Shown: positions 22,701 to 25,700, counted from the first letter of the stretch. The stretch: 64,000 bases of DNA from Sminthopsis crassicaudata (GCF_048593235.1 NC_133619.1:517603644-517667643); one strand, 5' to 3'. Notes: generated by a model from the letters alone, not told the origin. Numbers and translations: made by a program.

Positions 22701-25700
22701 AGGTAACTTTACTTGGACCCTAAATCCTGTTAACTTCAGGTTCCCAACCTCATCTCAATGGAATTTTCCTTTTTTGTTTCTACTCTCTAACATCTTGTCC
22801 AGCTTCACTTGGGTGACCCAGCTGCACCTGAACTAGTTCTCATCTCCCCATCTCGTGTCTGGTTTTCCCTATTTCTCTCCAAGACATTGCCATTCTTCCC
22901 ATCCTTTCCATTGTTTTATCTGATATAGTAACTCCCTGAAACAATTCTTTTTTTCTTTTTTTTTTGACAAGGCAATTAGGGTTAAGTTACTTGCCTAGGG
23001 TCACACAGCTAATGTTAATTGTCTGAAGCTAGATTTAATTTTTTGGGGTGGGGAAGAGCAGCCCAAGATGGCGTGAAAGGGCAGTAACTTGGCTGAGCTC
23101 ACTCCAAACCCAAACACTATTAAATAATGCCACAAAACAATTCCTGGAGCATCAGAACCCACAAAAGGATGGAGGGAAATAATTTTCCAGCCAAAGTCAA
23201 CTTAATCGTCAGAAAAGGTCTGTCACATCTATATGAGAGTGGAACACAGTCCAGACCAGGCTCTACCAACACAGGCCTAGTCCCAGCAAAGATCCAGCTC
23301 CAGCAAATGATTCAGTTGCTGCATCTGGGGCTTTCAGCCCCAAGAAAGGGGAGTCAAATAGCTGGTCAGAAGGAAATTACAGGAGCTCTTTGCTAGCACT
23401 GATACTGAGGGCAGGACTTTGTCTTTTTGCTCTCACTTAGTTCCTGGTTACAGTCCTAGGTCGTAGTTTCAGGAGGAGCACTAGCACACTAGAGCTTGCA
23501 GCTACAGGGAAGCAGAAACCATTGTAACAGTTCCAAGGCAGAAAAGAGTGCATGTGGTCTCCAATAGGCCAGGAAAGTGTCTCCTTAGATCACACCACCT
23601 TGAAGGAACTGAAAACTTACAGGTCCCTAAAAGTATCTCTGGAAATAGCTGTACAAAATTCTTGAAGCTTGAGACAGTGGCCCCCTCCACCCTGAAAGTA
23701 AAGACCTACTTTAACAAAGAGTTAAAAGTCAAGTAATAGGCTGGGGAAATGAGCAGATAACAGAAAAACAATTCTGATCATAGAAAGTTACTATGGTGAC
23801 AGGAAAGATTAAAACAGACTCAGAAGAAGATAGCAAAATCAAAGAAAAATACAAATTGGTCTCAAGCCATGAAAGAGCTCAAAAGGGATTTTTAAAACTT
23901 AAGTAAGAGAAATAAAGGAAAAATTGGAAAGAAAAATGGGGTGATGCAAGAAAAGCATAAACAGGCTTGGTAAAGGAAACTTTAAAAAATACTAAAGAAA
24001 ATGACACCTTAAAAAAAATTAGATTAAGCCAGACAGTAAAAGAGGTACAAAAGCCAATAGGGAGAAGAATACCTTAAAAAGCAGGATGGACCAAATGGAG
24101 AAAGAGGCACAAAAATTCATTGGGAAAAAAACTACTTAAAAAGTAGAATTGGCCAAAAGAAATAGGAAATACAAATGCTCATTGAAGAAAATAATTTCTT
24201 AAAAATTATAATTGAACAAATGGAAATTAATGGCTGTATGAGAAATCAATAAATAATAAAATAAAAGCAAAGAATTTTTTAAAAATAGAAGACAATGTGA
24301 AATATCTCATTGGAAAAACAACCTCAAAAAGTAGATCCAGAAGAGAATCTAAAAGTTATTGGACCATCTGAAAATTGCTTTTGTATTCTAGAACCAGAGG
24401 GTAGAATGGAACTTGAAAGCATCCAACCTCTGAAAGAGATCATAAAATGAAAACTCCAAGGAGTGTTATAATCAAATTCAAGAGCTCCCAAGTCAAAGAG
24501 AAAAAACTGCAAGCACCCCCAAAAAAAAATTTAAGTATCATGGAGTCACAGTCAAGATGATACAGGATTTATCAGGTTTTACATTAAAGGATCAGAGGGC
24601 TTGGAATATGATATTCTGGAGAACAAAGAGAAAACACCAGAAGTTAATTTAGAAGAACTGGGTTTGAACCCCTGCTCTGACAGTGACTACAAGTTCTTGA
24701 GACCTTTCCAAGTATCAGTTTTTTCATCTATGAAATGGGTTTGAATAATACTTGAATTACCTACATTACAGGCAGGTGGTTATTCTGGAAGTACTTAAAC
24801 CCCCAAATATTGTAAACTTTTTTTCTCTATTCATTATATATTTACTTTCTATATATATATTATTTTGCTTCAGTTTAGTATTTATAGCATGTGTTTTTTT
24901 CTAACCAGACTATTCATTTTTAACATTTAACGCACATTTATTGAGCACCTACTGTGTCCAAATCATACTAACATTGTTTGTTAGTATGATTTGGACACAG
25001 TAGGTGCTCAATAAATGTGCATTAAATGTAAGAGTGTTGAGTGAAGTTCTCCTCAAGAAGGGAAATAATTTGGAGTGTTTTGGCATTTATTGAGTGGAAG
25101 TTGGGATTTGTATATTGTGTTTATGGATTTCATTGATTGGCTTCTTACAGTTAGCAAGAGTGACCTGGAGATGTCAGGGCTGAGGACCCTAGAGCACGTA
25201 GCGGTGACTGTCTCCATCACCCACCCCTGTCGAGGTAGCTTAGAGCTGAAGCTCTTTTGTCCCAGTGGCATGATGTCCCTAATTGGTGCCCCACGAACCC
25301 TGGACAAGTATGTATATCCCCAGATCTAACACAGGCCCCTTGCCTCCTCATCTCCCCTTTGCCCTCTGCTTTCTTTTTACAGCACAGGAAATAATATTTC
25401 TGGTTGGAGGTGGAGATGGGGGGAGAGAACCTCCAAGAAGAAGTTAGGGTACTGCTTGATCTTCAAACTTGGTAGTGTCTTCTGGAGACATAGACATCAG
25501 CTTATAAATCTGCTTATTTCCTGGGAAGGAAAGCCCAAGCTAACTCTGAGTGTACCACACTTGGGAATACTTTTAGGCCACCCTCTTAGGCCCTCTCCCC
25601 CAGCCAGCAATGCTATATGCAACAGGTGCATAATGCTTCTGGGATGGAAGAGACTGTGAGCTGTGTCCTATCCTCCCTGCTCTCTCTTCTGCTTTTCTGT

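What the first reader, a model, noticed from the sequence alone, without database searches (positions are those of the whole stretch)
24923..25029. Near-perfect 51-bp hairpin built from L2 3'-end sequence, just upstream of PCSK7 exon 13
Seen: arms 24923-24973 and 24979-25029 pair at 50 of 51 positions (perfect 42-bp core, 5-nt loop ttgtt). The arms contain the L2 tail cagtaggtgctcaataaatg, and the hairpin ends 121 nt before the exon 13 acceptor. AATAAA lies in the stem on both strands (25010-25015 on +, 24942-24937 on -). Known: L2 copies elsewhere in this window are heavily decayed, and several mammalian miRNAs (miR-28, miR-151, miR-95) arose from inverted L2 sequence. Inference: such symmetry in ancient sequence needs a recent template-switch or arm-to-arm conversion, or selection. 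Possible roles: marsupial miRNA/endo-siRNA precursor, ADAR substrate, or a structure masking an intronic poly(A) site that would truncate PC7 before the P domain and TM.
Basis: partly seen in the sequence, partly recalled or inferred. Interest (0 to 1): 0.75.

Follow-up and report, generated by a model that had tools for sequence, protein, structure and literature searches.

The report
Young template-switch hairpin in dunnart PCSK7 intron
A near-perfect 51-bp hairpin in a PCSK7 intron of the fat-tailed dunnart is a real, lineage-specific copying accident in which DNA synthesis briefly read the opposite strand, a known way of making new hairpins, and nothing here shows that it has a function.

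Summary
Arms 24923-24973 and 24979-25029 pair at 50 of 51 positions around a 5-nt loop (RNA MFE -87 kcal/mol, z = -19).

The window is fat-tailed dunnart (Sminthopsis crassicaudata) PCSK7. I fetched the orthologous intron from Tasmanian devil (two assemblies), antechinus, koala and Dromiciops. All of them keep the right arm or part of it, as an old L2/MIR-type repeat tail. None has the left arm. At that position they share unrelated, ancestral repeat sequence.

The dunnart left arm is therefore a derived 51-nt reverse-complement copy of the adjacent right arm, with sharp edges. That is the signature of a replication template-switch mutation. The arms differ only at one old CpG site. By local divergence, the event happened roughly a quarter of the way back to the dunnart/devil split, with a wide error.

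Selection and arm-to-arm conversion are not needed. The AATAAA stands unmasked in devil and antechinus, which argues against a masking role.

Rfam's nearest model, mir-3116, has the same repeat-tail palindrome design but scores below its threshold.

Verdict: a clean new example of a known mutational kind, of modest interest.

The parts
24923..24973 (+). Left arm: a derived 51-nt reverse-complement copy of 24979-25029 (the template-switch patch). On the + strand it is antisense to the repeat tail.
   Evidence: 50/51 complementary to the right arm; absent in devil (2 assemblies), antechinus, koala and Dromiciops. Against devil or antechinus these columns show 23/44 mismatches plus a 12-nt gap, compared with 7.6% background.
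24974..24978 (+). 5-nt loop TTGTT. It is probably ancestral sequence where synthesis returned to the original template. The CA at 24972-24973 is shared with the ancestral CATT, so a 2-nt overlap at the junction is possible.
   Evidence: dunnart TTGTTTG lines up with Dromiciops CCGTCTG, differing only by transitions, and with devil TCATTTA.
24979..25029 (+). Right arm: the ancestral 3' tail of an L2/MIR-type repeat in sense orientation, and the template of the copy.
   Evidence: present in devil (5/51 differences), antechinus (6/51) and Dromiciops, and partly in koala (about 32 nt deleted). It continues collinearly into the same flank in all species.
24931..24931 (+). The only unpaired position: C24931 opposite A25021, a C/A mismatch in the RNA stem at an old CpG.
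   Evidence: the right-arm dinucleotide 25020-25021 is CA in all three dasyurids and TG in koala and Dromiciops. The left arm implies CG.
25010..25015 (+). AATAAA hexamer of the repeat tail, now inside the stem. GU-rich sequence follows at about 25034-25045.
   Evidence: The hexamer is also present in devil, antechinus and koala without any hairpin, and is lost in Dromiciops.
24830..25047 (+). Decayed L2-type 3'-end fragment that holds the hairpin. The template switch overwrote its 'GGCAGGGCAGGA...TGTCTT' segment.
   Evidence: Searches show the ancestral segment in four species. The assignment to L2 rests on my recollection of the L2 3'-end consensus and on the Rfam mir-3116 alignment to the tail. 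No repeat library was available.
24650..24828 (+). MIR-like SINE body directly upstream. It is context only and not part of the hairpin.
   Evidence: Read and conserved in all marsupials aligned. The family assignment is from memory of the MIR core.
25151..25307 (+). PCSK7 coding exon 11 (P domain), 121 nt downstream of the hairpin.
19458..25150 (+). Host intron of about 5.7 kb (approximate 5' end). The hairpin is transcribed in the sense of PCSK7 as part of it.
   Evidence: tblastn of the annotated dunnart PC7 on the locus, with places 22979-23015 masked.

Best explanation
The hairpin is the scar of one template-switch mutation in the lineage leading to the fat-tailed dunnart, after that lineage split from the devil and antechinus lineage. 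During DNA synthesis the growing strand left its template at about 24922. It copied 51 nt of the opposite strand, reading the old L2/MIR tail from 25029 back to 24979, and returned to the original template at about 24974. This replaced about 25-40 nt of ancestral repeat sequence with a perfect inverted copy, so a 51-bp stem with a 5-nt loop arose in one step. One substitution at a CpG has occurred since. Shown: the left arm is derived, the right arm is ancestral, the edges are sharp and the flanks are collinear. Inferred: the polymerase mechanism and that it was a single event. Because it lies in sense orientation in an intron of PCSK7, every pre-mRNA should carry a very stable duplex of about -87 kcal/mol. 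Its most likely fate is nuclear A-to-I editing and decay with the excised intron. Most likely it is selectively neutral and has no evolved role.
For: Palindrome statistics. Species identity: the window equals the S. crassicaudata locus L001 base for base over 24241-25341. Orthologous introns: devil L002 and L003, antechinus L004, koala L005 and Dromiciops L006. The alignments show the right arm in the sister dasyurids and in Dromiciops. At the left-arm position all four other species share one sequence, so the dunnart state is derived. Mutation cluster: 23/44 mismatches plus a 12-nt gap in the left arm and loop, against 47/616 (7.6%) in the rest of the intron and 5/51 in the right arm. The inverted-copy explanation accounts for 50 of 51 bases. 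Ancestral-type sequences do not fold: -26 to -29 kcal/mol in devil and antechinus, -14 in koala and -22 in Dromiciops, against -90 in dunnart over the same anchors. This meets and far exceeds the published criteria for template-switch events, an inverted fragment of at least 15 nt explaining at least 5 mismatches (PMC10710096). Arm divergence of 1/51 against species divergence of 7.6% places the event at about a quarter of the split age.
Against: An assembly error is therefore not formally excluded. No other member of the dunnart subfamily was available, so the date is loose: with 3.9 differences expected if the event were as old as the split, seeing 1 or fewer has probability of about 0.10. 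Neutrality is a default, not a result, because expression, editing and small RNAs were not examined. Microhomology at the switch points is weak (T/A and T/G pairs at the left junction, CA at the return junction).
Confidence: 0.78

Rival explanations
1. It is a newborn small-RNA gene. The template switch made the hairpin, and Drosha and/or Dicer now cut it from the PCSK7 intron into 21-23-nt RNAs carrying L2/MIR-tail sequence of both polarities. These could pair with the many transcripts that contain such tails.
For: The hairpin is intronic, in sense orientation and in a broadly expressed host gene, which is the setting in which template-switch hairpins became miRNAs in primates and mice (PMC10710096). 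The best Rfam match is mir-3116, a palindrome of the same repeat tail (60.2 bits, E 2.6e-12, on both strands). The loop contains UGU.
Against: The score is below Rfam's gathering threshold of 65, and the other miRNA hits score only as generic perfect hairpins. A 51-bp stem (up to about 59 bp with the weak extension) and a 5-nt loop depart from the ~35-bp stem and loop of 10 nt or more that are preferred. There is no conservation, because it is lineage-specific. No small-RNA data could be examined. The paper reports over 6,000 template-switch hairpins but only 18 human miRNA genes among them.
Confidence: 0.12
2. It is an assembly artefact: the inverted copy was introduced by the assembler or by a chimeric read and does not exist in dunnart DNA.
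For: Only one dunnart assembly was available (L001 equals the window). The word shares of the DNA runs (0.97 and 0.95) cannot decide the matter, because 31-mers inside the perfect core are the same in both arms and only about 6-7 of the 158 sampled words are diagnostic. Earlier notes list many short perfect palindromes in this assembly.
Against: The arms differ by a C/T change at a CpG, which is a biological kind of difference rather than an exact fold-back. The flanks are perfectly collinear with four other species, and the patch replaces ancestral bases as template switches do. The known fold-back artefacts I am aware of are kilobase-scale or lie at contig ends, not a 51-nt patch inside a chromosome-scale scaffold (own knowledge). 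Seventeen runs from nine studies hold most of the stretch.
Confidence: 0.05
3. It is a selected structure that hides the intronic AAUAAA (25010-25015), preventing premature polyadenylation that would truncate PC7 before the P domain.
For: The hexamer lies inside the stem and GU-rich sequence follows it. Stable stems can occlude poly(A) signals (general knowledge).
Against: The same hexamer and downstream sequence stand unmasked in devil and antechinus, and the hexamer also in koala. Full-length PC7 is annotated in those species, so no masking need is evident. Dromiciops has lost the hexamer and koala has deleted most of the tail, so the site is unconstrained. Use of the site was not tested.
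Confidence: 0.03
4. It is an ancient pair of inverted L2/MIR insertions, or a snap-back at retrotransposition, kept symmetrical by gene conversion or selection.
For: Both arms are repeat-tail sequence with the element's 3' end outermost, as a snap-back during reverse transcription would give.
Against: The left arm is missing in both sister dasyurids and in two outgroups, and all four share ancestral L2-type sequence at that position. The copy therefore post-dates the repeat by a very long time.
Confidence: 0.01

Closest known systems
Template-switch mutations (TSMs) that create hairpins and de novo miRNA loci (Monttinen, Frilander and Loytynoja 2023, PMC10710096)
   Same: There is a one-step replacement of a short stretch by the reverse complement of adjacent sequence, giving a perfect stem from previously unstructured sequence. 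The location is intronic and in sense orientation. The event is detected as a mutation cluster on one branch of a phylogeny.
   Different: The copy is 51 nt, longer than the 28-nt example described in the paper, though within the range it reports (up to 83 nt). It is in a marsupial. It lies in repeat sequence, a class which that study partly excluded. No evidence of expression or processing exists here.
mir-3116 (Rfam RF03754), a human palindromic miRNA precursor
   Same: The design is the same: antisense repeat tail, short loop, sense repeat tail. The sequence is similar over about 29 nt per arm, and the match is on both strands because it is a palindrome.
   Different: The score of 60.2 bits is below the gathering score of 65. 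The arms here are 22 nt longer and the loop is shorter. The dunnart hairpin arose within the dunnart lineage, so it cannot be homologous as a hairpin to a human locus. The resemblance is convergent use of a very abundant repeat tail.
   Same: The stems are built from L2/MIR sequence.
   Different: No Rfam hit to any of these families appeared even at E of 10 or less. By my recollection they are old, conserved and imperfect hairpins, not young perfect palindromes.
Hairpin endo-siRNA precursors and inverted-repeat ADAR substrates (inverted Alu or B1 pairs)
   Same: It is a long, perfectly paired intramolecular duplex inside a pre-mRNA. At 51 bp it is well above the roughly 30 bp that, by my recollection, permits promiscuous editing.
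   Different: It is a single short palindrome made by inverted copying, not two separate repeat insertions. Editing and dicing were not tested.

Membership tests
Template-switch mutation hairpin | A cluster of differences from the ancestral sequence confined to a short stretch on one branch | tested here: met
   23/44 mismatches plus a 12-nt gap in 24923-24978, against 47/616 (7.6%) in the rest of the intron. Koala and Dromiciops polarise the change to the dunnart branch.
Template-switch mutation hairpin | The new sequence is the reverse complement of nearby sequence (at least 15 nt, explaining at least 5 mismatches; criteria of PMC10710096) | tested here: met
   51 nt, 50/51 identical to the reverse complement of 24979-25029, which lies 5 nt away.
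Template-switch mutation hairpin | The template region pre-exists in relatives, and the flanks stay collinear | tested here: met
   the right arm is present in devil, antechinus and Dromiciops, and partly in koala. Both flanks align without rearrangement.
Template-switch mutation hairpin | The variant is real in the organism's DNA (supported by reads) | not testable with these tools
Exact-product look-ups found no other dunnart contig.
mir-3116 (RF03754) | A score at or above Rfam's gathering threshold | tested here: not met
   60.2 bits against 65; nothing in 23100-64000 reaches any family's gathering score.
mir-3116 (RF03754) | Common descent of the hairpin with the human locus | tested here: not met
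   The hairpin is derived within the dunnart lineage, so it cannot be inherited from a common ancestor with eutherians.
Canonical animal miRNA gene | A stem of about 35 bp with an apical loop of 10 nt or more | tested here: not met
   a 51-bp stem (up to about 59 bp with the weak extension) and a 5-nt loop. The preference is as quoted in PMC10710096.
Canonical animal miRNA gene | Discrete ~22-nt products with Drosha/Dicer end signatures | not testable with these tools
   No small-RNA reads could be laid.
Canonical animal miRNA gene | Conservation of the hairpin among related species | tested here: not met
   The hairpin is absent from devil, antechinus, koala and Dromiciops. Closer relatives were not available.
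L2/MIR 3' tail | Sequence match to the repeat consensus | tested here: inconclusive
   No repeat library was available. Support comes from the alignment to the mir-3116 model, itself a palindrome of this tail, and from my recollection of the L2 and MIR consensus. The ancestral 'GGCAGGGCAGGA' and 'CAGTAGGTGCTCAATAAATG' segments fit the L2 3' end.
Structure-masked intronic poly(A) site | The hexamer is functional as a poly(A) signal when unmasked | not tested
   This needs 3'-end data. Relatives with the unmasked hexamer have full-length PC7 annotated, which speaks against a need for masking.

The most novel reading that the evidence does not exclude
The template switch created, in one step, a dunnart-lineage small-RNA locus. 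The long perfect hairpin, transcribed with PCSK7, would be diced into siRNA-like or miRNA-like RNAs of both L2/MIR-tail polarities. These could pair with the very many mRNAs that carry such tails in their UTRs, giving an instant lineage-specific regulatory link. The A opposite C at 25021 would be a preferred ADAR site that tunes the stem.
Probability: 0.1. Interest if true: 0.6.

Novelty: new member of a known kind. Interest (0 to 1): 0.3.

Why it matters
This is an unusually clean, fully polarised example of a template-switch mutation outside primates and rodents. A 51-nt inverted copy turned unstructured, roughly 100-million-year-old repeat debris into a -87 kcal/mol RNA hairpin inside an expressed gene. 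It shows that perfect symmetry in ancient repeat sequence can be a young mutational scar and need not indicate selection. Earlier scan notes list several other perfect short palindromes in this genome, so the same explanation and the same orthologue test may dispose of many of them. If small RNAs or editing were found, the locus would be a datable newborn RNA gene.

Tried and rejected
Read support, polymorphism, RNA coverage, editing and small RNAs could therefore not be examined. Those places were masked in scripts and sent to no search tool afterwards.

2. The word search with the single exon returned only short eutherian- or bird-like ORF fragments. The metagenome-derived ones may be human contamination, so I did not fetch them.

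3. Exact-product look-ups of three window ORFs found nothing. One of these ORFs crosses the loop.

4. No DNA was returned for bilby, brushtail possum or Gracilinanus.

5. blastn and nhmmer of the arm, the spacer and the upstream SINE body against the window found no other informative copies.

6. Literature searches for the tail sequence, for the repeat origin of mir-3116 and for dunnart small RNAs found nothing useful. No supplements of the template-switch paper are held.

7. The bacterial-type promoter and terminator scan is irrelevant here.

8. Readings rejected: two inverted L2 insertions or a retrotransposition snap-back (the left arm is absent in relatives); arm-to-arm conversion of an old palindrome (there is no old palindrome in relatives); membership of mir-3116 (below threshold and not homologous).

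9. My first idea, that the upstream MIR body and the tail were one element split by a 150-nt insertion, was dropped. The intervening sequence is present in all marsupials and resembles the L2 3' end.

Full report
**1. The observation**

The sequence at 24923-25029 is a 107-nt near-perfect palindrome.
- Arms 24923-24973 and 24979-25029 are 51 nt each and 98% complementary, with 5 nt between them.
- The one mismatch is C24931 opposite A25021, which leaves a perfect 42-bp core.
- As RNA, 24913-25039 folds at -87.1 kcal/mol. Shuffles give -22.7 +/- 3.3, so z = -19.3.
- Complementarity ends abruptly at both outer edges: 9 of the next 40 positions match.
- The downstream exon (25151-25307) encodes part of a proprotein-convertase P domain. 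It is the 11th coding exon of PCSK7.
- The hairpin lies near the 3' end of an intron of about 5.7 kb, in the sense orientation of the gene.

**2. Whose genome, and how orthologues were reached**

An earlier scan note named the fat-tailed dunnart, and I tested this.
- The single exon, given by reference, went to a profile search. This returned a full-length lizard PC7 (P0038).
- A word search with P0038's P-domain region returned named marsupial PC7 proteins. A cluster look-up added Antechinus and Sminthopsis.
- Fetching the gene loci with their introns gave L001 (Sminthopsis crassicaudata), L002 and L003 (two independent Sarcophilus assemblies), L004 (Antechinus flavipes), L005 (koala) and L006 (Dromiciops).
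- L001 is identical to the window over 24241-25341. The window is therefore dunnart, and probably the same assembly.
- I did not build a spliced protein model from the window.

**3. What the comparison shows**

In the alignments the whole intron is collinear among the dasyurids.
- Dunnart differs from devil at 47/616 sites (7.6%) and from antechinus at 47/623.
- The right arm is present in devil (5/51 differences) and antechinus (6/51). It runs on into the same downstream flank.
- Dromiciops also has the right arm, including the inner 'TGTTAGTAT'. Koala has its outer part and lacks about 32 nt.
- At the position of the dunnart left arm, all four other species carry a shared, unrelated sequence ('...GGCAGGGCAGGA...TGTCTT...').
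- Against devil or antechinus these columns mismatch at 23 of 44 aligned positions and include a 12-nt gap.

Dunnart is sister to devil plus antechinus, and koala and Dromiciops are outgroups. The shared sequence is therefore ancestral and the left arm is derived on the dunnart branch. The new 51 nt are explained at 50 of 51 positions as the reverse complement of the sequence that starts 5 nt downstream.

Over the same anchors, the ancestral-type sequences fold at only -14 to -29 kcal/mol, against -90 for the dunnart. The structure arose from essentially unstructured sequence.

**4. Mechanism of origin**

This is the signature of a template-switch mutation as described by Monttinen, Frilander and Loytynoja (PMC10710096). 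The growing strand briefly copies the opposite strand and then returns, producing a complex replacement and a perfect inverted repeat in one event. Their criteria, an inverted fragment of at least 15 nt explaining at least 5 mismatches, are far exceeded.

In + strand terms:
- synthesis left the template after about 24922;
- it copied 25029 back to 24979;
- it resumed at about 24974, possibly with a 2-nt CA overlap;
- it overwrote about 40 nt (devil-type) or about 25 nt (koala-type) of ancestral sequence.

The comparative pattern is shown. The polymerase event and its single-step nature are inferred. Intrastrand and interstrand switching cannot be told apart.

**5. Age**

The arms differ at 1 of 51 sites, against 7.6% between dunnart and devil. 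Two arms diverge at the same rate as two lineages, so the point estimate is about a quarter of the time since the dunnart/Dasyurinae split. The error is wide. If the event were as old as the split, 3.9 differences would be expected, and seeing 1 or fewer has a probability of about 0.10 (from the numbers).

The one difference lies at an old CpG:
- the right arm has CA, as in devil and antechinus;
- koala and Dromiciops have TG;
- the left arm implies CG.

Either the left arm gained C after the copy, or CG decayed to CA twice. Each history involves only one change since the event.

**6. What the arms are**

The right arm and its surroundings (about 24830-25047) resemble the 3' end of L2. That 3' end is shared with the tail of MIR SINEs, and a MIR-like body lies just upstream (24650-28). 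This assignment rests on my recollection of the consensus sequences and on Rfam. The best Rfam hit is mir-3116 (60.2 bits on both strands, E 2.6e-12), whose consensus is itself a palindrome of the same tail.

That hit is below the gathering score of 65, and nothing in 23100-64000 reaches any gathering score. The other miRNA hits score as generic perfect hairpins. Because the dunnart hairpin is derived in the dunnart lineage, its likeness to mir-3116 is convergence on a very abundant repeat tail and not homology.

**7. What it does now**

Nothing could be measured.

The run search found 17 runs of one species label, from nine studies, that hold at least half of the sampled words of 24300-25800. 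This does not prove the palindrome. Words inside the perfect core are identical for both arms, and only about 6-7 of the 158 words are diagnostic. Three runs recorded as RNA hold only about 6-11% of the words, which fits the exon alone.

Inference from established knowledge:
- The hairpin is transcribed with PCSK7 and should form a 51-bp duplex.
- That is long enough for promiscuous ADAR editing, and A25021 opposite C is a favoured context.
- Its shape departs from the ~35-bp stem and loop of 10 nt or more preferred for pri-miRNAs. If it is processed at all, it would behave more like a short hairpin siRNA precursor.
- The poly(A)-masking idea is weakened. Devil and antechinus have the same AATAAA and the same GU-rich downstream sequence with no hairpin, koala keeps the hexamer, and all three have full-length PC7 annotated. 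Dromiciops has lost the hexamer and koala has deleted most of the tail.

I therefore take the hairpin to be a neutral scar with latent potential.

**8. Artefact question**

Only one dunnart assembly was available. Four points argue for a real variant:
- the CpG-type difference between the arms;
- the collinear flanks;
- the replacement of ancestral bases, rather than a simple fold-back;
- the position deep inside a chromosome-scale scaffold.

I put about 5% on an artefact. The two devil assemblies agree with each other throughout the aligned region.

**9. Verdict**

Selection and conversion are not needed. The functional proposals remain untested, and the masking proposal is weakened. This is a new member of a known kind. 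Earlier unchecked notes of this scan list several similar perfect palindromes elsewhere in this genome. The orthologue route used here could test them.

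Noticed in passing
window 25228-25230 (codon in PCSK7 coding exon 11): All three dasyurid PC7 proteins (dunnart, devil, antechinus) have Cys in the otherwise invariant P-domain motif THP-R-RG. Only these 3 of 109 full-length PC7 proteins fetched have Cys, one Logan product has Trp and all the rest have Arg. 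This is a dasyurid-specific change at a deeply conserved residue.
   Followed up: partly
window 43893-43956: A second perfect hairpin in the same window: 26-bp arms, 100% complementary, 12-nt loop. It is already noted as a separate finding in a SIDT2 intron. It may be another template-switch scar and could be tested by the same orthologue route.
   Followed up: no
L002:19590-19640 and L004:21060-21110 (orthologous to window ~24923-24990): Devil and antechinus carry a 23-nt tandem duplication (CTTTCATTTGTTAATATGATTTG followed by CTTTCATTTACTAGTACGATTTG) that koala and Dromiciops lack. Whether the dunnart ancestor had it is unknowable, because the template switch overwrote the site.
   Followed up: partly
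L005:23400-23410; L006:19880-20030: Koala lacks about 32 nt of the right-arm orthologue. Dromiciops has a SINE-like insertion of about 150 nt between the repeat tail and the exon. This shows that the region is unconstrained across marsupials.
   Followed up: no
They lie inside the same PCSK7 intron, not in an exon.
   Followed up: no
window 24650-24828: A MIR-like SINE body lies directly upstream of the L2-type fragment and is conserved in position in all marsupials aligned. The family assignment is from memory only.
   Followed up: no
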